Virus record (IMG/VR): IMGVR_UViG_3300020477_000990
Location: 248,001-312,000 of that record
Length of the DNA stretch: 64,000 nucleotides
Reading direction: 5' to 3' (one strand)
A model generated the notes under the pieces. It was not told the origin of the DNA. It ran no database searches and saw only the letters and a list, made by a program, of their open reading frames with translations. The position numbers and the translations under genes are program-made. Numbering within the stretch: the first letter of the stretch is position 1; the number at the start of each line of letters is the position of its first letter. This document shows, piece after piece, positions 8,707-62,582 of the stretch.

Positions 8707-11031
8707 ATGAACGCACAGGGCAAAAAAGAAATCTATATAGTAAAACGAAACGGTCAACGTGAACCGTTAGATATTAACAAAGTACATAAAATGACAGAAG
8801 CCGCTTGTGGGGATCTCCCAGGAGTGTCAAGTTCACTAGTTGAAATGAATTCAGGATTACAGTTTTCAGATGGTATGACAACTGCTCAAATTCAAGAGAT
8901 TTTAATTCGTTCTGCTAATGATCTTATATCATTAGAATCACCAAATTATCAATATGTAGCGGCAAGATTATTATTGTTTACTATTAGAAAAGAAGTATTT
9001 GGAAAACATATTGATGGTAACTATCAAGTTCCATTACAGTTTTTAGTTGGAAGAAATATTGAAAAAGGATTATATGATTCTAATATAATGAAATGGTATA
9101 CTGATGAAGATTTTAAAAGATTAGATTCATATATTAAACATGATAGAGATTACAATTTTACATACGCAGGATTAAGGCAAGTTTCTGACAAATATCTAGT
9201 ACAAGATAGAAGTTCCGGAAATGTATTTGAAACACCTCAGTATATGTATATGTTAATTGCGGCAACATTGTTTTGCAACTATCCAAAAGAAACACGTCTA
9301 TCATATGTAAAAAGATATTATGATGCTGTTTCTACTTTTAAAATTAATATTCCTACGCCAGTGATGGCAGGAGTACGTACACCATTAAGACAATATGCTT
9401 CTTGTGTATTAGTTGATGTAGACGATACATTAAATTCAATTTTTTCTAGTGATATGGCAATTGGTAGATACATTGCACAAAGAGCCGGCATTGGAATTAA
9501 TGCAGGTAGAATACGTGGAATTAATTCACGTATTAGGGGTGGAGAAGTAGCACACACAGGTGTTATCCCATTTCTTAAAAAGTTTGAATCAACGGTAAGA
9601 TGCTGTACGCAAAACGGAGTACGTGGTGGTAGTGCTACGGTCCATTTCCCTATCTGGCACCAAGAAATAGAAGACATACTTGTATTAAAAAATAATAAAG
9701 GTACAGAAGATAATAGAGTACGAAAACTTGATTATTCAATACAATTGTCAAAAATATTTTATGAAAGATTTATTAAAGGAGGAAATATTACTTTGTTTTC
9801 TCCACATCAAGTACCAGGTTTATATGAAGCATTTGGTACACCAAAATTTGATAAGTTATATAAAAAATATGAACAAGATGAAACAATACCTAAAAAAATT
9901 GTACAAGCAAGAACATTAATTAGTGATGTTTTAAAAGAACGTGCTGAAACAGGAAGAATTTATATTATGAATATAGATCATGCAAACGAACATAGTTCAT
10001 TTGTAGATAAAGTTAATATGAGTAATTTATGCCAAGAAATAACTTTACCTACTGATCCTTTACAGCATATTGATGGAAAAGGTGAAATTGCTTTATGTAT
10101 TCTTTCAGCAATTAATGTTGGATTAATAAAAGATTTAACTGAACTTGCTCATTTATGTGATTTGGCAGTAAGAGCTTTAGATGAAATTATTGAGCACCAA
10201 GGTTATCCTGTTAAGGCGGCAGAACATTCTACAAAAGCAAGACGTTCACTTGGTATTGGATATATTGGTTTAGCACACTATTTGGCTAAAAATAAAGTTA
10301 AGTTTAATGATAAAAGAGCTTGGAAAATTGTAAATGAATTAACAGAAGCATTTCAATATTCTTTGATTAAAGCAAGTGTAGAGTTAGCAAAAGAAAAAGG
10401 CCCTTGTGATTATTTTAAAAAAACAAAATATTCAAAAGGAATTATGCCAGTTGATACTTATAAAAAAGATGTAGATGAAGTTGTTGGAGATAAGTTAAAA
10501 CAAAATTGGGAAAAATTACGTACTGAAGTTAAGCAATATGGAATGAGGCATTCAACATTATCAGCACAAATGCCTAGCGAAAGTTCTTCTGTAGTAGGCA
10601 ATGCTACTAATGGAATTGAACCACCTAGAGATTATTTGTCAGTTAAGAAAAGTAAAAAAGGTCCACTAAAGCAAATAGTTCCACAGTATAAAACATTAAA
10701 AGATTATTATACGTTGTTATGGGATATGCCAAGCAATGAAGGATATATTAATATTGTTGCTGTTATGCAAAAATATTTTGATCAAGCAATATCAGGAAAC
10801 TGGAGTTATAATCCAACGCATTTTGATAATAATGAAGTTCCAATGAGTGTATTAACAAAAGATTTTTTAACAACATATAAGTTAGGTTGGAAAACGTCAT
10901 ATTATCAAAATACATATGATTTTAAAGGTGAAGAACCAAATATTACAGATCAAGAAAATACATTAACAGTTGATGAAGCTTTAAGTACTGCTGAAGATAA
11001 TGATGAGGAATGCGATTCATGTACAATATAA
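8707..11031 (+). CDS. nrdA: ribonucleotide reductase class Ia alpha subunit with ATP cone
   Basis: VKRNG ATP cone, PTPVMAG, ASCVL, SNLCQEI, ALCILS, C-terminal CDSC. Confidence 0.97.
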   Translation: MNAQGKKEIYIVKRNGQREPLDINKVHKMTEAACGDLPGVSSSLVEMNSGLQFSDGMTTAQIQEILIRSANDLISLESPNYQYVAARLLLFTIRKEVFGKHIDGNYQVPLQFLVGRNIEKGLYDSNIMKWYTDEDFKRLDSYIKHDRDYNFTYAGLRQVSDKYLVQDRSSGNVFETPQYMYMLIAATLFCNYPKETRLSYVKRYYDAVSTFKINIPTPVMAGVRTPLRQYASCVLVDVDDTLNSIFSSDMAIGRYIAQRAGIGINAGRIRGINSRIRGGEVAHTGVIPFLKKFESTVRCCTQNGVRGGSATVHFPIWHQEIEDILVLKNNKGTEDNRVRKLDYSIQLSKIFYERFIKGGNITLFSPHQVPGLYEAFGTPKFDKLYKKYEQDETIPKKIVQARTLISDVLKERAETGRIYIMNIDHANEHSSFVDKVNMSNLCQEITLPTDPLQHIDGKGEIALCILSAINVGLIKDLTELAHLCDLAVRALDEIIEHQGYPVKAAEHSTKARRSLGIGYIGLAHYLAKNKVKFNDKRAWKIVNELTEAFQYSLIKASVELAKEKGPCDYFKKTKYSKGIMPVDTYKKDVDEVVGDKLKQNWEKLRTEVKQYGMRHSTLSAQMPSESSSVVGNATNGIEPPRDYLSVKKSKKGPLKQIVPQYKTLKDYYTLLWDMPSNEGYINIVAVMQKYFDQAISGNWSYNPTHFDNNEVPMSVLTKDFLTTYKLGWKTSYYQNTYDFKGEEPNITDQENTLTVDEALSTAEDNDEECDSCTI

Positions 11032-13720: not shown

Positions 13721-13810
13721 GGAAGGGTGGCTGAGTGGTTGAAAGCACCGGTCTTGAAAACCGGCAAAGGCGCAAGTCTTTCCAGAGTTCGAATCTCTGC
13801 CCTTCCGCCA
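13721..13810 (+). tRNA. tRNA-Ser(TGA)
   Basis: GGAAGGG/CCCTTCC acceptor, CCGGT-cttgaaa-ACCGG anticodon arm, long variable arm, GTTCGAATC, CCA. Confidence 0.96.
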
Positions 13811-27380: not shown

Positions 27381-27713
27381 ATGAAACACAGTTCTAAACC
27401 AAGAAAGACATTCGAAATAGGAAAGTTTCAAGGTGATCGTCCTAATTGGAAAGATCGTAAAGATAGAAAACCAAGATATGAAAAACTTCCTGGAATGGCA
27501 GTTGCAGTTCAAGATAATAATGTTGAAAAAGCAATAAGACGACTTAAAAAAATGTTACAAAAAGAAGGTATGTTTCAAGAATTACGTGATAGACGATATT
27601 ATGTTAAACCTTCTGAAAAGAAAAGAGTTGCAAAAAAAGCCGCAATAAGAAGAGCCAAAAGAGATAGAAAATTAGAAGAACTTGGTTTACCCCCAAAAAG
27701 ATCAAGATACTAG
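27381..27713 (+). CDS. rpsU: 30S ribosomal protein bS21 with a basic N-terminal extension
   Basis: VQDNNVEKAIRRLKK...EG...ELRDRRYYVKPSEKKR. Confidence 0.92.
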   Translation: MKHSSKPRKTFEIGKFQGDRPNWKDRKDRKPRYEKLPGMAVAVQDNNVEKAIRRLKKMLQKEGMFQELRDRRYYVKPSEKKRVAKKAAIRRAKRDRKLEELGLPPKRSRY

Positions 27714-28476: not shown

Positions 28477-28801
28477 CCCACCAACAGATCAAAAATGGGC
28501 CCATACTTGGCTAACAGAGTTAGTGTCTAAAATTGGCATGGAAATATGCCAAGGTCCTATTACAACGTATGTAAATGTACCAGGTAATAGAGGCTTAACC
28601 GGTCTAGTAATTATAGAAACATCACATATAGCATTGCATTGTTGGGATGAAACTGATCCTGGCTTATTACAATTAGATGTTTATACCTGTGGAAGTTTGC
28701 CAACTGATGTTATATTTGAAGAAATTAAACAATTTGATCCTGTTAAAGTTGAATACAAATACTTAAATAGAGAACGAGGTTTAACAGAGATTAATATATA
28801 G
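28433..28801 (+). CDS. speD: S-adenosylmethionine decarboxylase (pyruvoyl type)
   Basis: HKHLI, GLTGLVIIETSHIALHCW, LDVYTC. Confidence 0.85.
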   Translation: MIEHKHLIVRAEVNNPPTDQKWAHTWLTELVSKIGMEICQGPITTYVNVPGNRGLTGLVIIETSHIALHCWDETDPGLLQLDVYTCGSLPTDVIFEEIKQFDPVKVEYKYLNRERGLTEINI

Positions 28802-28876
28802 GCGATTAGCTCAGTTGGTTAGAGCATTCCCTTGATAAGGGAAAGGTCGTAAGTTCGAGTCTTACATCGCCTACCA
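28800..28876 (+). tRNA. tRNA-Ile(GAT)
   Basis: AGGCGAT/ATCGCCT acceptor, TTCCC-ttgataa-GGGAA, CCA. Confidence 0.95.
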
Positions 28877-28877
28877 C

Positions 28878-28953
28878 GGGTGATTAGCTCAGTTGGTAGA
28901 GCACCTCGTTTACACCGAGGGGGTCGTTGGTTCGAGTCCAGCATTACCCACCA
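28878..28953 (+). tRNA. tRNA-Val(TAC)
   Basis: CCTCG-tttacac-CGAGG anticodon arm, TTCGA, CCA. Confidence 0.95.
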
Positions 28954-28954
28954 T

Positions 28955-29031
28955 GGAGTGTTAGCTCAACTGGTTAGAGCACCCGCCTGTCACGCGGGAG
29001 GTTGAGGGTTCGAGTCCCTTACACTCCGCCA
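28955..29031 (+). tRNA. tRNA-Asp(GTC)
   Basis: GGAGTGT/ACACTCC acceptor, CCCGC-ctgtcac-GCGGG, CCA. Confidence 0.96.
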
Positions 29032-29299: not shown

Positions 29300-30352
29300 A
29301 TGCCATTAAGTCTTAATAATATAAAAAAGTTTGATATTGAAATTACAAATAAATGTAATGCTAGATGTCCAGGATGTATTCGTACGGTAAATGGAGATAC
29401 ACACCCTTTGCTAAAACAAAATATTACTGAATGGTCAATGGAAGATTTTTCTAATTTAATTCCTAAAGATATTATTAATGGTAAAGAGTTTATATTTGGT
29501 GGCACAGTTGATGATCCTTTTATGAATAAAAATATCATACCAATTACAAAATATATTTTAGATAATGGTGGATCAATTGAAATACATACTAATACAGGAG
29601 CAAATACTGAAAAAACATTTAAAGAAATGGGAAGATTAAGTAAAGAGTCTGGAAGGCTATTAGTAATATTTTCTGTAGATGGATTTGAAAAAACAAATCA
29701 TTTATATAGAGTAAATGTTAATTGGAATAAAGTTGTTGAAAATATGAAGGCATATACAATAGCAGAAGGCAACTGTGAATGGGAATATTTAGTTTTTGAT
29801 CATAATTATGATGATATAGAGAAAGCAAGACGATTTGCAAATGATTTAGGAATAAAATTTATATTAAGACAAAATGTAAGAAACAATCATAGTTGGGTTA
29901 GTAAAAGCAAAGTAAAAGAAAAAGGTGAAATAGTAACTAAAGAGTTTGAAGTAAAAACAACCGATAAATTTAAACACCCTGAAACAGAAGAAGTAGTCAA
30001 ATATAATGATAAATTAAAGGTTTCTAAAGAAGAAGGCCAAAGTATATATTGTAAAATGTATCATGATAAAAGTGTATTTGTTGATTGGAACTATAAAGTA
30101 TGGCCATGTTGTTGGTTTGCAACAGAAAATTTTGAACAGCATGAATATTTTCATATGTTGATTGATCAATTTGGAGAAACTTGGAATAGTTTAAGGTATC
30201 ATACTTGGAATGAAATACTAGGCCATGATTATTATTCTAAATTATTATATCAAAGTTGGAATGGTCAACAATCAGATTATTATAATCCTACTTGTTTTAA
30301 GCAATGTGGTGATAATGCATCTAGACAGAGTTATAAAAAAGAACAATTATAG
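29300..30352 (+). CDS. radical SAM enzyme with C-terminal SPASM/twitch domain (subfamily A)
   Basis: EITNKCNARCPGC, SVDG..TNHLYRVNV, WEYLVFDHN, YC...WPCC, CFKQC. Confidence 0.87.
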   Translation: MPLSLNNIKKFDIEITNKCNARCPGCIRTVNGDTHPLLKQNITEWSMEDFSNLIPKDIINGKEFIFGGTVDDPFMNKNIIPITKYILDNGGSIEIHTNTGANTEKTFKEMGRLSKESGRLLVIFSVDGFEKTNHLYRVNVNWNKVVENMKAYTIAEGNCEWEYLVFDHNYDDIEKARRFANDLGIKFILRQNVRNNHSWVSKSKVKEKGEIVTKEFEVKTTDKFKHPETEEVVKYNDKLKVSKEEGQSIYCKMYHDKSVFVDWNYKVWPCCWFATENFEQHEYFHMLIDQFGETWNSLRYHTWNEILGHDYYSKLLYQSWNGQQSDYYNPTCFKQCGDNASRQSYKKEQL

Positions 30353-30354
30353 AC

Positions 30355-30382
30355 TTGACAAAAATATAATTGATGCTATTAT
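30355..30382 (+). promoter_or_regulatory. sigma70-type promoter TTGACA-N16-TATTAT (TGn), leaderless geometry
   Basis: -10 ends 6 nt before the ATG at 30389. Confidence 0.7.
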
Positions 30383-30388
30383 TATATT

Positions 30389-30634
30389 ATGAACAATTTA
30401 GAAATACAAAATAAACAATTAGCTTATGCTTGTATAGATCGTTTAGGTGGAGAAGCAGAAGGATACGAAGTACGTAAACTTTCTGGAATAGAAGAAGATC
30501 CACGAATTAACTATAATGGCCTAAATACACAAATAGCCCTAAGAGGACTAGAAAAAGAAGGCATTATACATAGAACAAAACGAAATACAAGACAAGTTAC
30601 TTGGCATATTACAAAGAAAAAAAGAATTATTTAA
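30389..30634 (+). CDS. small hypothetical protein, possible winged-helix DNA binder
   Basis: ALRGLEKEGIIHR...VTWHI pattern. Confidence 0.5.
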   Translation: MNNLEIQNKQLAYACIDRLGGEAEGYEVRKLSGIEEDPRINYNGLNTQIALRGLEKEGIIHRTKRNTRQVTWHITKKKRII

Positions 30635-30648
30635 GTAATTTTAAAAAA

Positions 30649-30666
30649 AAGAGCTTTTTGGCTCTT
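30649..30666 (+). terminator. hairpin AAGAGC-tttttg-GCTCTT flanked by A and T tracts
   Basis: 6-bp stem seen directly. Confidence 0.4.
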
Positions 30667-30720
30667 GACTTTTTAAAAATAGTGCTTATATAATAATATA
30701 CAACATTAGTTGTATAAATA
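30664..30720 (+). promoter_or_regulatory. stacked promoters for hsp20-dnaK: RpoH-like CTTG-N17-CTTATAT, sigma70-like TTGACT-N18-TATAAT and late TATAAATA
   Basis: motifs at 30664-30691, 30665-30694 and 30713-30720. Confidence 0.55.
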
Positions 30721-30721
30721 T

Positions 30722-30775
30722 ATGTGTAGATTGCTATGATAGGATCTACATATTAAAACTTGCTTAAAGGAGGAG
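30722..30775 (+). ncRNA. tandem ROSE-like RNA thermometer hairpins
   Basis: TTGCT..AGGA occurs twice; the second copy pairs with the SD. Confidence 0.5.
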
Positions 30776-30780
30776 TTAAA

Positions 30781-31224
30781 ATGACTAGAAATCTATCTAT
30801 TTTTAATCAGTTACGTCCAGTAACTGTAGGGTTCGATAATATATTTGATCACTTTGAAAGAATGTTTGACGGAGACGTTATGAACATTCCACAGGTTAAT
30901 TATCCACCATATAATATCGTAAAGACAGGTGAAAACACCTACGATATTGAATTAGCATTAGCAGGATTCAGCAAAAATGATATTGATGTTGAATACGAGA
31001 ATAATGTATTAACTGTAAAATCAATCAAAAAAGCAGAAACCGTACAAGAAGGAAACAATGGAATGTTACATCAAGGTATTTCCAAAAGAATGTTTTCTAA
31101 ATCTTTTACTGTTTCAGATGATGTTGAAGTTAAAGGTGCAGAACTTAAAGATGGTTTGCTTAAAGTTTCTTTGGAAAGAATTATTCCAGAATCTAAAAAG
31201 CCAAGAACTATCAAAATTAAGTAA
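30781..31224 (+). CDS. small heat-shock protein Hsp20 (IbpA-like)
   Basis: YPPYNI, IELALAGF, LHQGISKRMF, AELKDGLLKV; AGGAGGAG SD. Confidence 0.95.
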   Translation: MTRNLSIFNQLRPVTVGFDNIFDHFERMFDGDVMNIPQVNYPPYNIVKTGENTYDIELALAGFSKNDIDVEYENNVLTVKSIKKAETVQEGNNGMLHQGISKRMFSKSFTVSDDVEVKGAELKDGLLKVSLERIIPESKKPRTIKIK

Positions 31225-31252
31225 TTAACAGGAAAGGAGATATATTAGAACC

Positions 31253-33145
31253 ATGAGTAAAATAATTGGTATTGACTTAGGTACAACAAACTCTTGCGTA
31301 TCCATTATGGAAGGTAAGGGAGCCAAAGTTATAGAAAATGCAGAAGGTACTAGAACAACACCATCTGTAGTATCGTTTGGAGATGAACGATTAGTAGGTA
31401 CACCAGCAAAAAGACAGGCTGTTACAAATCCTACTAATACGGTTTTTGCTTCTAAACGTTTAATAGGAAGAAAATTTGATGGAGATTCTGTACAAAAAGA
31501 CATACAGACATCACCATTTAAAATTGTAAAGGCGGAAAATGGAGATGCTTGGGTAGAAGCTAACAACGAAAAATACTCACCATCACAAATTTCGGCTTTC
31601 GTTCTTCAAAAAATGAAAGAAACAGCAGAAAAGTATTTAGGACAAGAAGTAACTAAAGCGGTTATTACTGTTCCTGCGTACTTTAACGATTCACAAAGAC
31701 AAGCAACTAAAGATGCAGGTAAAATTGCAGGACTTGAAGTTGAAAGAATTGTGAATGAACCAACTGCGGCGGCACTTGCCTACGGTTTAGATAAGAAAAA
31801 AACTGGTACGGTTGCTGTATATGACTTAGGTGGAGGTACTTTTGATATTTCTATTTTAGAAATAGGTGACGGAGTATTTGAAGTTAAGTCAACAAATGGT
31901 GATACATCATTGGGTGGTGAAGATTTTGACAATGCATTAGTAGATTATATACTTGCAGAGTTCAAAAAAGACTCAGGTGTAGACTTAAGAAATGATAATC
32001 TTGCACTTCAACGTGTAAGAGAGGCGGCAGAAAAGGCAAAATGTGAATTATCATCTGCAACACAAACAGATATTAGTTTACCATTTATTACTGCTGACAA
32101 ATCTGGACCAAAACATTTAAATCTTAAATTAACAAGAGCTAAATTTGAATCATTGGTTGATGATCTAGTTGATAGAACATTGCAACCATGTAAACAAGCT
32201 CTAAAAGATTCAGGATTTAGTGCTGGAGACATTAGTGAAGTTATTCTTGTAGGTGGTATGACAAGAATGCCTAAAGTTCAAAAAGCAGTTCAAGACTTTT
32301 TTGGTAAAGAACCAAATAAAAGTGTAAATCCAGATGAAGTAGTAGCAATTGGAGCCGCAATTCAAGGTGGTGTATTACAAGGTGATGTTAAAGATGTGTT
32401 ACTTTTAGATGTAACACCATTATCACTTGGTATTGAAACACTTGGAGGTGTATGCACGAAGCTAATTGAAAAGAATACAACTATTCCTACAAAGAAAAGT
32501 CAAGTATTCTCAACTGCTGATGATGGTCAAACGGCAGTTACTATTAGAGTAATGCAAGGTGAACGTGAAATGGCCGCTGATAATAAGTTACTAGGTAACT
32601 TTGACTTGGTAGGTATTGCATCTGCACCAAGAGGTGTACCTCAAATTGAAGTAACATTTGATATTGATGCTAATGGTATCGTAAATGTTAGTGCAAAAGA
32701 CAAAGGTACTGGCAAAGAACAAAAGATACAAATACAAGCATCAGGTGGATTAAGTGAAACTGAAATCGATAAGATGGTAAAAGACGCTGAAGCCAATAAA
32801 GAAGCAGATAAAAAGAAAAGAGAAGAAGTAGATGTTAAGAATCAAGCAGATACAATGATTCATTCTACTGAAAAAACTCTTAAAGAACATGGCGATAAGT
32901 TATCAACAGAAGATAAAAAGAAAGTTGAAGACGACTTGACTGCATTAAAAGATGTAATATCTTCTGGAAATAGCGAAACAATTAAGGATAAAATTAAATC
33001 TTTAACTGAATCAGCTATGAAGTTAGGTGAAGCTGTATATAAAGATCAGCAACAACAAACATCTAATAATAATGAAAATGCTTCTAACGATGCAAAAAAC
33101 AACGATAATGTTGTTGATGCAGACTTTGAAGAAGTTAAGAAATAA
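31253..33145 (+). CDS. dnaK: Hsp70 chaperone DnaK
   Basis: [39 protein letters not shown]-type linker region, C-terminal DADFEEV. Confidence 0.98.
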
Positions 33146-33157
33146 TTAGCTATACAA

Positions 33158-33187
33158 AATCCCCGGTAATTTTTTTTGCTGGGGATT
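33158..33187 (+). terminator. GC-rich hairpin after dnaK
   Basis: AATCCCC/GGGGATT inverted repeat. Confidence 0.5.
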
Positions 33188-33252
33188 CTCTTGAATAACG
33201 ATAAATACTTTAGAATATAAGAATTAGTTTCCGAAAAGGGCTTTTAAGTAAA

Positions 33253-33816
33253 ATGGATTTTTTAAAAATAAAAAAACACGGGATATTTTTGAAATGGTGG
33301 TGGTTTTTCTGCTTATTATTTGCGGCAACCGTACTATTAATTAATTTTGAAGTACATGAATTACTATGGGATCAAGATAGAACCAAATTATCATTCTTTA
33401 TTTTATCTATTTTCTATGCAATGACAGTACATTGTGGATATGAAAGTTGGAAATTAAGTAAATTAGCAAATGGAGATATAAAAAATCTTCCAAATTTAGA
33501 TACAAGGCACGAACCAGGTTGGTTTGCATCTGACATTTTATTAACATTAGGTCTAATTGGAACAGTATCAGGATTTATTTTAATGTTAGCTGGGGCTTTT
33601 AGTGGAATTAATATTTCTGATGTATCATCAGTACAAACTGCATTAGCAAGAATGGCAGTAGGAATGTCAACAGCATTATATACAACGTTGACAGGTTTGA
33701 TAACTAGTACAATTTTAAAATTTCAATATTTTAGATTAGATCAAGACTTAGAGAGGTATAGACAGAGACAGGCATCAAGCCTAATAGAACAGGTTGTTGA
33801 AAACCAAAAGGAATAG
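33253..33816 (+). CDS. MotA/TolQ/ExbB-family proton-channel subunit
   Basis: four TM segments; LGLIGTVSGF and GMSTALYTTLTGL motifs; GATAAATA at 33200. Confidence 0.8.
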   Translation: MDFLKIKKHGIFLKWWWFFCLLFAATVLLINFEVHELLWDQDRTKLSFFILSIFYAMTVHCGYESWKLSKLANGDIKNLPNLDTRHEPGWFASDILLTLGLIGTVSGFILMLAGAFSGINISDVSSVQTALARMAVGMSTALYTTLTGLITSTILKFQYFRLDQDLERYRQRQASSLIEQVVENQKE

Positions 33817-33819
33817 TCA

Positions 33820-34527
33820 ATGTCAAATTTACGTCGCCATCGTAGTTACGGATCACAAGTTGCTTTTATAGATTTATTATTCAACACTCTTGTTGGATTT
33901 GTATTTTTATTTGTAATGGCGTTCATATTAATTAATCCAGTTGCTAAAAAATCTAATGTTGAATTAAATGCAGAATTTATTATTACAATGAAATGGCCGA
34001 AAAAAGCAGAAGATGATGTAGACCTTTGGGTAAGAGATCCTTTAGGAAATACAGCTGGATTTAAATCTAAAGATGTTGGACTTATGAGTTTAGATAGAGA
34101 TGATTTAGGTGGTGCCAATGATACAGTTATTGGTGCAGATGGTAAAGCAATTAAAGTATATAATAATGAAGAGCATATGACAATTAGAGGAATTATACCA
34201 GGAGAGTATATTGTTAACGTTCACTTGTATGCCAAAAAAGCAGAAAAACAAGTTAAAAGTAAAAGTAAATACTATCCTAGTATACCGGTAACTGTTACAG
34301 TAGAAAAATTAAATCCATACGGAATTGTAACAGTTAGAGAAATTATATTAACGAAAAAAGGACAAGAAATTACGGCAGTTAGATTTACAGTAGATGATCA
34401 AGGTAAGATTACGAACATAAATCAATTGCCATATCAAATGATTATTAATCCATATTCTGGCACAGATGATGGAATTGGAAGTAGTCATGGAGCCGCGGCA
34501 AACACAGAATATTTTGGAGCACCATAA
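33820..34527 (+). CDS. ExbD/TolR/MotB-like single-TM subunit with a YfaP/DUF2135-like periplasmic domain
   Basis: AFIDLLFNTLVGFVFLF (Asp in the TM), W...DDVDLWVRDP.G, PGEYIVNVHLY. Confidence 0.65.
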   Translation: MSNLRRHRSYGSQVAFIDLLFNTLVGFVFLFVMAFILINPVAKKSNVELNAEFIITMKWPKKAEDDVDLWVRDPLGNTAGFKSKDVGLMSLDRDDLGGANDTVIGADGKAIKVYNNEEHMTIRGIIPGEYIVNVHLYAKKAEKQVKSKSKYYPSIPVTVTVEKLNPYGIVTVREIILTKKGQEITAVRFTVDDQGKITNINQLPYQMIINPYSGTDDGIGSSHGAAANTEYFGAP

Positions 34528-34529
34528 TT

Positions 34530-35096
34530 ATGATACAAGGGCATATATTTTTAGTACTACTTTTAATGATCATAGGAGCAACAGTTCTATGGACATTTAT
34601 ATCTTCATCTGGAAGTAAATGGAGTATAAAAGCAGTAATGACATTATTGGTTATATTAGCAATTTTAAGTTCTTGGGTTGGATTAAAAACAATGTATGGA
34701 TATCCATACGATTCATATCCAAATCATGGAAAGTATTTTTTAATAGGCCAACACGTTAAAGAGCCAAATATTAAAACTGGTGATCCTGGAGCAATTTATG
34801 TATGGTTAATTATTAGAGAGGCCAATGAAGAAAATTTAACTTGGGTAGATAAGTTAAGTGATCTATTTAATGGTAGACAACCGCGTGTTTATGCTATACA
34901 ATATAATAGACAAATGCATGAAGAATTACAAAAGATTGATGAGGAAAGAAGAGGGCAACCTTTTCCGATAACTATTGCATCTGAAGAAGCAAAAGAAAGA
35001 GGCGAAGCACATCAAGGTAATGATCGTGAAGAAAGGCAAAAATTTGTACCGTATGTTTTACCAGATACGGTTCTAATTGAAAAAAATGTAAATTAA
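34530..35096 (+). CDS. two-TM membrane protein, third gene of the motor module
   Basis: two N-terminal hydrophobic helices, soluble C-terminus. Confidence 0.6.
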   Translation: MIQGHIFLVLLLMIIGATVLWTFISSSGSKWSIKAVMTLLVILAILSSWVGLKTMYGYPYDSYPNHGKYFLIGQHVKEPNIKTGDPGAIYVWLIIREANEENLTWVDKLSDLFNGRQPRVYAIQYNRQMHEELQKIDEERRGQPFPITIASEEAKERGEAHQGNDREERQKFVPYVLPDTVLIEKNVN

Positions 35097-48663: not shown

Positions 48664-48738
48664 GACCCCTTCGTCTATCGGTTAGGACATCAGGTTTTCA
48701 TCCTGAAAAGAGGAGTTCGATTCTCCTAGGGGTCGCCA
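48664..48738 (+). tRNA. tRNA-Glu(TTC)
   Basis: GACCCCT/AGGGGTC acceptor, TCAGG-ttttcat-CCTGA, CCA. Confidence 0.95.
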
Positions 48739-62251: not shown

Positions 62252-62516
62252 GTCTATTAAAAACAAAGCAAAAGAGGATCTTGAAATAATTGATATTACC
62301 TTATTGTTAAGGCAAAGGCGATGTCGAGATTCGATAGATGAAGAATTACAAAAAATGCAGATGTATGATTCCTATTATGGAGATGCGGACATTATATTAG
62401 AAGGTAAGATATATCGTTTACAGCCATTTGTAATTCATAGAAGAACAGGTAAAAGAATAGATGTATTGTATAATGAAGATACACACAAAGTCGAAGCTCA
62501 TATTATTCCGCAGTAG
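62250..62516 (+). CDS. hypothetical protein
   Basis: ATG at 62250; stop codon lies inside tRNA-Asn. Confidence 0.5.
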   Translation: MSIKNKAKEDLEIIDITLLLRQRRCRDSIDEELQKMQMYDSYYGDADIILEGKIYRLQPFVIHRRTGKRIDVLYNEDTHKVEAHIIPQ

Positions 62517-62582
62517 CTCAGTTGGTAGAGCAGTTGACTGTTAATCAATTGGTCGCAGGTTCGAGTCCTGCCTGCGGAGCCA
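62507..62582 (+). tRNA. tRNA-Asn(GTT)
   Basis: TCCGCAG/CTGCGGA acceptor, GTTGA-ctgttaa-TCAAT, CCA. Confidence 0.96.

What the first reader, a model, noticed from the sequence alone, without database searches (positions are those of the whole stretch)
30664..30780. Heat-shock control region: RpoH-like promoter and two tandem ROSE-like hairpins
Seen: CTTG-N17-CTTATAT overlaps a sigma70-like promoter, followed by a late promoter. Two TTGCT...AGGA units follow (30731-44 within a longer stem; 30760-71 pairing with the SD). Established: alphaproteobacterial RpoH promoters approximate CTTG-N17-CYTATNT, and ROSE thermometers upstream of small HSP genes use U(U/C)GCU paired to AGGA with a bulged G. 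Inference: phage hsp20-dnaK is wired to host sigma32, sigma70, phage late sigma and temperature.
Basis: partly seen in the sequence, partly recalled or inferred. Interest (0 to 1): 0.6.

Follow-up and report, generated by a model that had tools for sequence, protein, structure and literature searches.

The report
Host-derived heat-shock switch on phage hsp20
A 328-kb marine phage carries, in front of its hsp20-dnaK chaperone genes, the heat-shock promoter and two-hairpin ROSE-type RNA thermometer of its likely SAR11 host, with a phage late promoter added, which would be the first ROSE-type thermometer reported in a virus.

Summary
CTTG-N17-CTTATAT (30664-30691) overlaps TTGACT-N18-TATAAT (30665-30694). 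TATAAATA follows at 30713-30720, then two hairpins (30722-30753 and 30757-30777), each with UUGCU opposite AGGA and a bulged G. The second hairpin sequesters the Shine-Dalgarno sequence of hsp20 (ATG 30781).

The in-window motif count is not significant (0.7 expected). The comparative evidence is strong:
- About 57 non-redundant phage hsp20 loci and 57 of 121 Pelagibacterales genomes share the layout.
- Hairpin I shows heavy covariation, and both unpaired Gs are near-invariant.
- A promoter matrix built from the other loci scores this site 33 bits, against 14.6 for the next best site in the phage genome.
- Host dnaK, lon and hsp20 carry the same sigma32-type boxes, and the hosts encode RpoH.
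- TATAAATA occurs only in the phage copies. The phage has a gp55 homologue.
- Metatranscriptome contigs begin at 30704-30717, with no coverage upstream.

The closest known system is the Pseudomonas ibpA sigma32 promoter plus short ROSE-like thermometer (Rfam ROSE_3). The window scores only 12.9 bits against its 43-bit threshold, so it is a divergent AT-rich relative.

Temperature sensing and sigma32 dependence are inferred, not shown. It is a new member of a known kind, of moderate interest.

The parts
30649..30666 (+). Terminator-like hairpin (AAGAGC-TTTTTG-GCTCTT) with a T-run, at the end of the upstream 81-aa ORF. Its 3' arm overlaps the -35 box.
   Evidence: terminator scan (7 pairs, T-rich tail). 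RNA contigs show no coverage upstream of 30688.
30664..30691 (+). Sigma32 (RpoH)-type promoter, CTTG-N17-CTTATAT
   Evidence: the only exact match in the 328-kb genome; 33.2 bits on a matrix built from the other loci (next best 14.6); homologous boxes in phage and SAR11 hsp20 loci; the same type upstream of host dnaK and lon.
30665..30694 (+). Overlapping sigma70-type promoter, TTGACT-N18-TATAAT
   Evidence: 11/12 match; one of 17 TTGAC-N17-19-TATAAT sites in the genome, all on the + strand.
30698..30713 (+). Inverted repeat TACAAC-ATTA-GTTGTA. Predicted 5'-terminal hairpin of the transcript from the upstream promoter, or possibly a DNA operator.
   Evidence: fold; relatives have TACAG..CTGTA or TACAGC..GCTGTA (compensatory change). 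An RNA contig begins at 30704.
30713..30720 (+). T4-type late promoter, TATAAATA
   Evidence: 27/57 phage loci against 0/36 host loci, always 66-80 nt before the ATG; 20 of 25 + strand copies in the genome are intergenic; gp55 homologue present.
30722..30753 (+). Hairpin I: 11-bp lower stem, bulged G30733, 3-bp upper stem (UUGCU 30731-35 / AGGA 30741-44). A stable 5' hairpin.
   Evidence: helix 99.5% paired, 7 of 8 pairs with compensatory changes.; bulged G present in 35/35 sequences.
30757..30777 (+). Hairpin II: anti-SD UUGCU (30760-30764) with bulged G30762, paired to the Shine-Dalgarno GGAGGAG (30769-30775). The presumed thermosensor.
   Evidence: dG -7.3 kcal/mol at 15 C, -5.4 at 25 C, -3.1 at 37 C; 87-90% paired. 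G present in 34/35; aligns to hairpin II of ROSE_3.
30781..31224 (+). hsp20 (small heat-shock protein, 147 aa)
   Evidence: Pfam HSP20, 2.9e-18. (phrog_432); 72% identity to Hsp20 of Pelagibacterales MAGs.
31253..33145 (+). dnaK (Hsp70, 630 aa), 28 nt after hsp20 with no hairpin or terminator between them
   Evidence: Pfam HSP70, 1.7e-275; 74-75% identity to Pelagibacterales DnaK; spacer is unstructured. RNA contigs bridge the junction.

Best explanation
The region 30649-30780 is a complete heat-shock control cassette that shares its origin with the hsp20 (ibpA) gene of SAR11 bacteria. The phage has modified it.

Transcription (inferred):
- Transcription starts near 30700 from a promoter that host RNA polymerase carrying sigma32 (RpoH) can read. 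In this phage clade sigma70 can probably read it too.
- Late in infection, transcription also starts near 30726 from a T4-type late promoter (TATAAATA) read by the phage gp55 sigma.
- Both transcripts carry a short ROSE-type RNA thermometer and run through hsp20 into dnaK.

Translation control (inferred):
- Hairpin I is a stable 5' hairpin that sets the fold and probably protects the 5' end.
- Hairpin II is weak. It pairs the Shine-Dalgarno sequence with UUGCU around a bulged G.
- At low temperature hairpin II hides the ribosome-binding site of hsp20. On warming it melts and allows translation.

What is shown:
- The motifs, the folds, their conservation and covariation, and the same layout in host genomes.
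- RNA contigs that begin just after the upstream promoter.

What is inferred, by homology with the tested Pseudomonas ibpA system:
- Which sigma factors are used.
- The temperature response.
For: Structure:
- The two-hairpin fold appears.
- 49 non-redundant UTRs fold the same way.
- Covariation on alignment A3 gave 93% of cells paired against 70% in shuffles. Hairpin I was 99.5% paired, with 7 of 8 pairs showing compensatory changes. Alignment A4 gave the same picture.
- The unpaired G is present in 35/35 sequences for hairpin I and 34/35 for hairpin II.

Kinship with ROSE:
- Rfam ROSE_3 is the only thermometer family hit. It scores 12.9 bits for the window, 34.1 for phage Melnitz and 22-26 for SAR11 hosts.
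- The alignments match hairpin for hairpin.
- The Pseudomonas system it models is a sigma32 promoter plus a two-hairpin thermometer in which hairpin II alone suffices (PMC3669281).

Promoter:
- Matrix score of 33.2 bits against 14.6 for the next best site in the genome.
- The exact alpha-type pattern occurs in 13 of 57 phage loci, against 0.01 expected.
- SAR11 hsp20 promoters read CTTGAAA-N14-CC(C/T)ATAT.
- Host dnaK and lon carry the same boxes.
- The hosts encode RpoH. The phage has no RpoH- or RpoD-like sigma.

Late promoter.

Specificity: the RNA model hits only hsp20 in the phage genome and in host genomes.

Expression:
- Four marine metatranscriptomes give zero depth over 30300-30687.
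- Contigs start at 30704 (0 mismatches), 30712 and 30717, and run across hsp20 into dnaK.
Against: - The window scores far below the Rfam ROSE_3 gathering threshold (12.9 against 43 bits).
- The RpoH pattern is not significant by in-window count.
- The promoter is also an 11/12 sigma70 match, so sigma32 use cannot be separated from sigma70 use by sequence.
- Its -10 box (CTTATAT) lacks the C-run of host dnaK and lon promoters (CCCCAYAT).
- Nearest-neighbour energies place the melting of hairpin II near 50 C. The predicted SD accessibility rises only from 0.24 at 15 C to 0.34 at 37 C.
- The RNA evidence comes from assembled contigs, which cannot prove a transcription start, strand or level.
- No experiment on any phage or SAR11 copy was found.
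Confidence: 0.6

Rival explanations
1. This is an ordinary sigma70 early promoter. The RpoH-like match in this window is a by-product of TTGAC and TATATAAT, and host sigma32 plays no part.
For: - TTGACT-N18-TATAAT is an 11/12 consensus match.
- It belongs to a set of 17 such + strand promoters in this genome. Seven of these also have a C before TTG, and several have TATATAAT.
- The in-window chance expectation for the RpoH pattern is 0.7.
Against: - None of the other 16 sigma70-type promoters scores on the hsp20 promoter matrix (next best 14.6 bits against 33.2).
- Relatives keep the C of CTTG and the C/A-Y of the -10 box while having CTTGAAA, CTTGTAA or CTTGCAA as the -35 element.
- Many relatives have TATATA as the -10 element, which lacks the final T that sigma70 needs.
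- The homologous host hsp20, dnaK and lon promoters are of canonical sigma32 type.
Confidence: 0.2
2. The hairpins are real, but they act as mRNA stabilisers, processing signals or a constant translational brake. They are not a temperature sensor.
For: - Hairpin I sits at the predicted 5' end of every transcript type, the position of known 5' stabiliser hairpins.
- The computed SD accessibility changes little with temperature.
Against: - The anti-SD element is the ROSE signature U(U/C)GCU with an invariant unpaired G and G-U pairs. This is a deliberately weakened helix kept under selection.
- The element occurs only in front of small heat-shock genes, and in some relatives dnaK, in phages and hosts.
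- The homologous Pseudomonas element is an experimentally proven thermometer (PMC3669281).
Confidence: 0.15
3. The cassette is a passive relic that was carried along when hsp20 moved between SAR11 and the phage. It no longer functions in the phage.
For: - Phage and SAR11 Hsp20 proteins group together.
- Their upstream regions are collinear.
Against: - The cassette is kept across phage lineages whose Hsp20 proteins are only 53-88% identical.
- It shows compensatory changes in the stems, while the linkers and loops drift.
- Phages added a late promoter at a fixed distance from hairpin I.
- Transcripts that include the UTR are found in the sea.
Confidence: 0.05

Closest known systems
Short ROSE-like RNA thermometer of Pseudomonas ibpA (Rfam ROSE_3, RF02523; Krajewski et al. 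2013, PMC3669281)
   Same: - A sigma32-type promoter directly upstream.
- A UTR of about 60 nt made of two hairpins.
- Hairpin I is stable and carries U-G(bulge)-C-C opposite G-G-G.
- Hairpin II pairs the SD with U(U/C)GCU around an unpaired G.
- The AUG is free, and the downstream gene is a small heat-shock protein.
- cmscan aligns the two hairpin for hairpin.
   Different: - It is AT-rich and scores below the family threshold (12.9 bits here, 22-34 in relatives, against 43).
- The G-C pairs that flank the core in Pseudomonas are replaced by A-U and G-U pairs.
- The SD is duplicated (AGGAGGAG), which gives two pairing registers.
- It lies in a virus, with a phage late promoter inserted and dnaK co-transcribed.
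Classical ROSE elements of rhizobia and Agrobacterium (Rfam ROSE, RF00435) and E. coli ibpA (ROSE_2)
   Same: - The U(U/C)GCU anti-SD with a bulged G in the 3' hairpin.
- The location upstream of small heat-shock genes of alpha- and gamma-proteobacteria (as described in PMC11182007 and PMC3669281).
   Different: - Those elements have three or four hairpins and are about 70-120 nt long.
- Neither model matched the window even at E <= 10.
The hsp20 5' region of SAR11 (Pelagibacterales), found here
   Same: - It has the same promoter type, CTTGAAA-N14-CC(C/T)ATAT.
- It has the same two hairpins and a closely related protein.
- It is the nearest natural relative of the phage cassette and shares its origin.
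   Different: - Host copies have no TATAAATA (0 of 36) and no TTGAC/TATAAT sigma70 boxes.
- Their -10 box abuts hairpin I.
- dnaK is not downstream.
- I found no published description of it.
Known phage RNA thermometers: lambda cIII, SPbeta blyA, and the sigma70 gene of a gut Caudoviricetes (PMC11182007)
   Same: A temperature-responsive 5' UTR structure in a phage gene. In the gut Caudoviricetes case the element is also shared with the host.
   Different: - Those are a two-state switch (cIII) or fourU-type hairpins.
- None is ROSE-like and none controls a chaperone.
- None is reported there as a family spread over many phage lineages.

Membership tests
ROSE-like RNA thermometer (short type, Rfam ROSE_3) | Lies in the 5' UTR of a small heat-shock protein gene | tested here: met
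   The downstream ORF 30781-31224 is Pfam HSP20 (2.9e-18) and phrog_432. The element ends 3 nt before the ATG.
ROSE-like RNA thermometer (short type, Rfam ROSE_3) | [quoted passage not shown] | tested here: met
   Predicted folds. The same fold appears in 49 non-redundant relatives. Covariation supports both helices.
ROSE-like RNA thermometer (short type, Rfam ROSE_3) | Anti-SD motif U(U/C)GCU paired imperfectly with the SD, with a bulged G | tested here: met
   UUGCU at 30760-30764 with G30762 unpaired. G is present in 34/35 aligned sequences, and the UCGCU variant also occurs in relatives.
ROSE-like RNA thermometer (short type, Rfam ROSE_3) | Score at or above the Rfam gathering threshold (43 bits) | tested here: not met
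   The window scores 12.9 bits, E = 4.6. Phage Melnitz scores 34.1. SAR11 hosts score 22-26.4. ROSE and ROSE_2 gave no hit.
ROSE-like RNA thermometer (short type, Rfam ROSE_3) | Temperature-dependent melting of the SD hairpin and temperature-dependent translation | not testable with these tools
   Only nearest-neighbour energies were available: dG of hairpin II is -7.3, -5.4 and -3.1 kcal/mol at 15, 25 and 37 C.
Sigma32 (RpoH)-dependent promoter | Matches the consensus. The alpha-proteobacterial form CTTG-N17-CYTATNT is recalled from the literature and was not retrieved here. The E. coli form NNCTTGAA-N13-18-CNCCATAT is quoted in PMC3669281. | tested here: met
   Exact match to the alpha form at 30664-30691. 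Against the E. coli form, the -35 box matches 5 of 6 and the -10 box matches 4 of 7 specified bases.
Sigma32 (RpoH)-dependent promoter | The same box type precedes other heat-shock regulon genes of the host, and the host has RpoH | tested here: met
   Pelagibacterales dnaK and lon carry it. SAR11 hsp20 carries it. RpoH scores over the curated cut-off in 5 of 5 host genomes.
Sigma32 (RpoH)-dependent promoter | Transcription start about 6-8 nt after the -10 box, dependent on RpoH and induced by heat | tested here: inconclusive
   Metatranscriptome contigs begin at 30704, 30712 and 30717, with zero depth upstream. This fits a start near 30700, but contigs cannot prove a start. Sigma dependence cannot be tested here.
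T4-type late promoter (gp55-dependent) | A TATAAATA box, a gp55 late sigma encoded by the phage, and the motif concentrated upstream of genes | tested here: met
   TATAAATA at 30713-30720. gp55 homologue at G000:C1:192618-192932, E = 1e-13. 20 of 25 + strand copies are intergenic in a 92% coding genome, and 18 lie within 80 nt of a gene start.
T4-type late promoter (gp55-dependent) | Late timing of transcription from this site | not testable with these tools
   No infection time course is available. The RNA contigs seen start upstream of the expected late start at about 30726.
Sigma70 promoter | TTGACA-N16-18-TATAAT | tested here: met
   TTGACT-N18-TATAAT, an 11/12 match. This is a consensus match only and does not exclude sigma32 use.

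The most novel reading that the evidence does not exclude
Abundant ocean myophages of SAR11 (and the OM43 phage Melnitz) carry a regulatory module that shares its origin with the host hsp20 gene: a host sigma32 promoter fused to a ROSE-type RNA thermometer, with a phage late promoter spliced in. Phage chaperone output would then be set jointly by the host's stress state, sea temperature and the infection clock. This would be the first ROSE-type thermometer in any virus. It would also be an unrecorded ROSE_3-like family in SAR11 itself, and would link infection success in the ocean's most abundant bacterium to temperature.
Probability: 0.5. Interest if true: 0.7.

Novelty: new member of a known kind. 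Interest (0 to 1): 0.55.

Why it matters
Only three RNA thermometers were reported in phage genomes in the literature I could search (PMC11182007), and none is ROSE-like.

Here a whole family appears in front of a core auxiliary gene (hsp20) of marine T4-like phages. It spans at least 57 distinct phage loci and is matched in about half of the sampled SAR11 genomes.

It shows a phage keeping a gene's promoter and RNA sensor as well as the gene, then editing them by adding a late promoter and sigma70-like boxes.

It gives a concrete, testable handle on how temperature and host stress could shape phage-SAR11 infection. It also gives a small AT-rich thermometer that probably works at ocean temperatures.

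Finally, it shows that Rfam's ROSE models miss these AT-rich relatives.

Tried and rejected
- **Rfam at gathering thresholds.** It found only tRNAs in the window. With permissive thresholds, ROSE_3 was the only thermometer hit, at 12.9 bits. ROSE and ROSE_2 gave nothing, so strict family membership is not claimed.
- **Plain MAFFT alignment of the UTRs (A1).** It mis-registers the stems, so I did not use it for pair counts. I built a covariance model from a nine-sequence seed (A2, R1) and realigned instead. These alignments are fitted to the model, so the pair counts lean towards the structure. The slid and shuffled controls address this.
- **Weak R1 hit at window 9909-9969** (20.7 bits, E about 0.4). 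It lies inside coding sequence and has no SD/ATG context, so I rejected it.
- **Pattern search for sigma32 boxes in two host genomes.** It gave 7 hits, of which only dnaK and lon are upstream of genes. The rest look like chance, and the reversed-pattern controls gave 1-2 per strand.
- **Literature searches.** Searches for a phage hsp20 thermometer, a Pelagibacter thermometer, or an HTVC008M heat-shock promoter found nothing relevant.
- **Source for the alpha-proteobacterial RpoH consensus.** I could not retrieve one from the library. That consensus is cited from memory.
- **Careful phylogeny.** It did not finish, so only the quick tree is reported. The direction and number of hsp20 transfers remain unresolved.
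- **Other thermometer types.** FourU-type and cyanobacterial hsp17-type thermometers were considered and rejected. There is no U-run opposite the SD, and the element has two hairpins, not one.
- **Hairpin I as a terminator.** Rejected because no U-run follows it and a separate terminator lies at 30649-30666.

Full report
**Context.**
- The window is bases 248001-312000 of a complete 328,149-bp virus record. The record has direct terminal repeats, CheckV completeness of 100% and 31.8% G+C.
- The finding lies between an 81-aa ORF with no family match (30389-30634) and a two-gene chaperone unit: hsp20 (30781-31224) and dnaK (31253-33145).
- The phage Hsp20 is 72% identical, and its DnaK 74-75% identical, to proteins of Pelagibacterales (SAR11) genomes. 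SAR11 is therefore the likely host; this is an inference.

**The observation.**
- A terminator-like hairpin at 30649-30666 ends the upstream gene.
- CTTG-N17-CTTATAT spans 30664-30691.
- TTGACT-N18-TATAAT spans 30665-30694, an 11/12 match.
- TATAAATA is at 30713-30720.
- The RNA from 30722 folds into two hairpins.
  - Hairpin I (30722-30753) has UUGCU facing AGGA, with G30733 bulged.
  - Hairpin II (30757-30777) has UUGCU (30760-30764) facing the Shine-Dalgarno run GGAGGAG (30769-30775), with G30762 bulged. The AUG is free.
- Counted within the window alone, the RpoH pattern is not significant: 0.7 matches are expected.

**Relatives.**
- Pelagibacter phages Mosig and HTVC008M and Methylophilales phage Melnitz show the same order of elements upstream of hsp20.
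- A scan of IMG/VR gave 80 more loci whose Hsp20 is 53-88% identical.
- Printed side by side, nearly all have the same series of elements:
  - a CTTG-N17-(C/A)YTATAT box;
  - often a TATAAATA;
  - a hairpin with a variable stem and a constant Y-G-C-Y...R-G-G top with an unpaired G;
  - an A/U-rich linker;
  - CUUGCUU (or CUCGCUU) facing AAGGAG just before the ATG.
- A deep-branching group uses AACUGUCU facing AGGAGGUU, with a G-A mismatch in place of the bulge.

**RNA structure.**
- MAFFT mis-registers the stems. I therefore built a covariance model from a clean nine-sequence seed and realigned all loci.
- On 59 distinct sequences, 93% of cells pair, against 70% in shuffles and 40-66% when partners are slid.
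- Hairpin I is 99.5% paired, and 7 of its 8 pairs show changes on both sides. For example, one pair is G-C in 19 sequences, A-U in 16 and U-A in 16. The stricter set gives the same picture.
- The unpaired G is present in 35 of 35 sequences for hairpin I and 34 of 35 for hairpin II.
- These alignments are fitted to the model, so the counts lean towards the structure. The controls and the independent single-sequence folds argue that the structure is real.
- The model hits only hsp20 in the phage genome.

**Hosts.**
- The same cassette precedes hsp20 in bacterial genomes.
- A refined model found one copy in 57 of 121 sampled Pelagibacterales genomes at 26-69 bits. In the 30 loci checked, it lay in front of a 148-150-aa Hsp20.
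- The promoters there read CTTGAAA-N14-CC(C/T)ATAT. One of them is an exact CTTG-N17-CCTATAT, which differs from the window's boxes by two bases.
- Pelagibacterales dnaK and lon carry (G)TTG(T/A)AA-N13-14-CCCCA(C/T)AT.
- The host genomes checked encode RpoH above the curated cut-off, and the only other sigma hit is RpoD-sized.
- The phage has no such sigma of its own.
- A quick tree groups phage and SAR11 Hsp20 proteins together, apart from OM43 and other proteobacterial sequences. It does not resolve the order of transfers.

**Promoter specificity.**
- A position matrix built from the other loci, leaving the window out, scores the window's site at 33.2 bits. The next best site on either strand of the 328-kb genome scores 14.6, and none of the 16 other TTGAC-N17-19-TATAAT promoters scores high.
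- Positions I did not select for are also conserved: A-A-T-T-T after CTTG, and the A in TATAT.
- The exact alpha-type pattern occurs in 13 of 57 non-redundant phage loci (0.01 expected). The one-mismatch form occurs in 26 of 57.
- In this phage's own clade the -35 box is TTGAC and a TATAAT-like hexamer lies 18 nt away. A dual sigma32/sigma70 promoter is therefore plausible, but sequence cannot decide this.

**Late promoter.**
- TATAAATA is found in 27 of 57 phage loci and in none of 36 host loci, always 66-80 nt before the ATG.
- It either overlaps the sigma32-type -10 box (CTTATATAAATA in the HTVC008M-like phages, CCCCATATAAATA in Mosig) or lies 12-24 nt after it, as it does here.
- In this genome 20 of 25 + strand copies are intergenic although 92% of the genome is coding. 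Eighteen lie within 80 nt of a gene start.
- The motif is depleted overall, with 8 copies against 18.5 expected in the window.
- A gp55 late-sigma homologue is present.

**Expression.**
- Four marine metatranscriptome runs were laid on 30300-33200.
- All four give zero depth over 30300-30687.
- Contigs begin at 30704 (identical strain), 30712 and 30717. They continue through hsp20, and two of them continue into dnaK. Separate contigs bridge the hsp20-dnaK junction.
- This fits a start near 30700 from the upstream promoter and co-transcription of the two genes.
- The lack of upstream coverage argues against DNA carry-over.
- These are assemblies and not reads, so they cannot prove a start or a strand.

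**Comparison with what is known.**
- The only Rfam thermometer that responds is ROSE_3, the short ROSE-like element of Pseudomonas ibpA. It scores 12.9 bits for the window, 34.1 for Melnitz and 22-26 for SAR11, against a threshold of 43.
- The cmscan alignment shows that ROSE_3 has the same hairpin I top (GAUGCCG...CGGGUC with an unpaired G) and the same hairpin II (ACUcGCuG...CaGgAG).
- In Pseudomonas that element follows a proven sigma32 promoter. Hairpin II alone confers thermoregulation, and hairpin I stays closed and supports the fold (PMC3669281).
- The phage cassette therefore works like this system by every sequence feature I could test. It fails the score threshold, so I call it a divergent, AT-rich relative and not a curated member.
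- Computed energies for hairpin II are -7.3, -5.4 and -3.1 kcal/mol at 15, 25 and 37 C. This makes it a weak helix, but the calculation does not show a sharp transition.

**Novelty.**
- The searchable literature lists three phage thermometers, none of them ROSE-like (PMC11182007).
- I found no description of a thermometer or heat-shock promoter for phage hsp20 or for SAR11.
- The GenBank records of the three cultured phages annotate only coding sequences here.
- The mechanism is a known one. What is new is its presence in viruses, its spread across marine phage lineages and SAR11, and the phage-specific addition of a late promoter.

**Verdict.**
- Sigma factor use and temperature sensing are inferences by homology.
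- My confidence in the full mechanism is about 0.6. My confidence that the two-hairpin RNA is a real, selected cis-regulatory element is about 0.9.

Noticed in passing
L018:1946-2008 and L019:1952-2014 (between hsp20 and dnaK in related phages); compare window 31225-31252: In these relatives dnaK has its own GC-rich hairpin followed by CUCUUUGCUUAAUAAGGAGGAG, a ROSE-like anti-SD/SD pair. In the window dnaK follows hsp20 after an unstructured 28-nt spacer. I do not know of a ROSE-like element in front of dnaK.
   Followed up: partly
L030-L079 group (for example L046:1420-1485): A second design of hairpin II: AACUGUCU faces AGGAGGUU with a G-A mismatch in place of the bulged G. There is no U(U/C)GCU and usually no TATAAATA, and the sigma32-type -10 box abuts hairpin I as it does in bacteria.
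   Followed up: partly
window 30698-30713: The inverted repeat TACAAC-ATTA-GTTGTA lies between the -10 box and TATAAATA. Clade relatives have TACAG..CTGTA or TACAGC..GCTGTA, which is a compensatory change. It may be a 5'-terminal hairpin of the early transcript or a DNA operator overlapping the late promoter.
   Followed up: partly
G000:C1:27705, 40445, 259034 (= window 11034) and 324846: Several sigma70-type promoters have an ATG only 6 nt after TATAAT, which suggests leaderless early mRNAs. The promoter at 27705 drives a DnaJ-domain ORF.
   Followed up: no
G000 whole genome: The phage encodes Hsp20, DnaK and a DnaJ-domain protein (C1:27745-27924). It has no GrpE and no RpoH/RpoD-like sigma. 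A gp55-like late sigma lies at C1:192618-192932.
   Followed up: partly
Pelagibacterales genomes G001-G122 (loci L124-L153): One copy of the two-hairpin element per genome was found in 57 of 121 sampled SAR11 genomes. In the 30 loci checked it preceded a 148-150-aa Hsp20 with a CTTGAAA-N14-CC(C/T)ATAT promoter. These copies are below the Rfam ROSE_3 threshold (22-26 bits), and I found no published description of them.
   Followed up: yes
window 30755 (linker between the hairpins): RNA contigs from related strains carry a 5-nt insertion (AATAT) here and a T-to-A change at 30754. The linker tolerates length change while the stems are kept.
   Followed up: no
window 28800-29028, 13721-13807, 48664-48735 and 62507-62579: The window holds six tRNA genes. 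Three form a tandem cluster just upstream of the radical-SAM and hsp20 region.
   Followed up: no
window 33253-35096: Downstream of dnaK lies a MotA/ExbB-family protein (33253-33816), followed by two ORFs with no Pfam or PHROG match.
   Followed up: no
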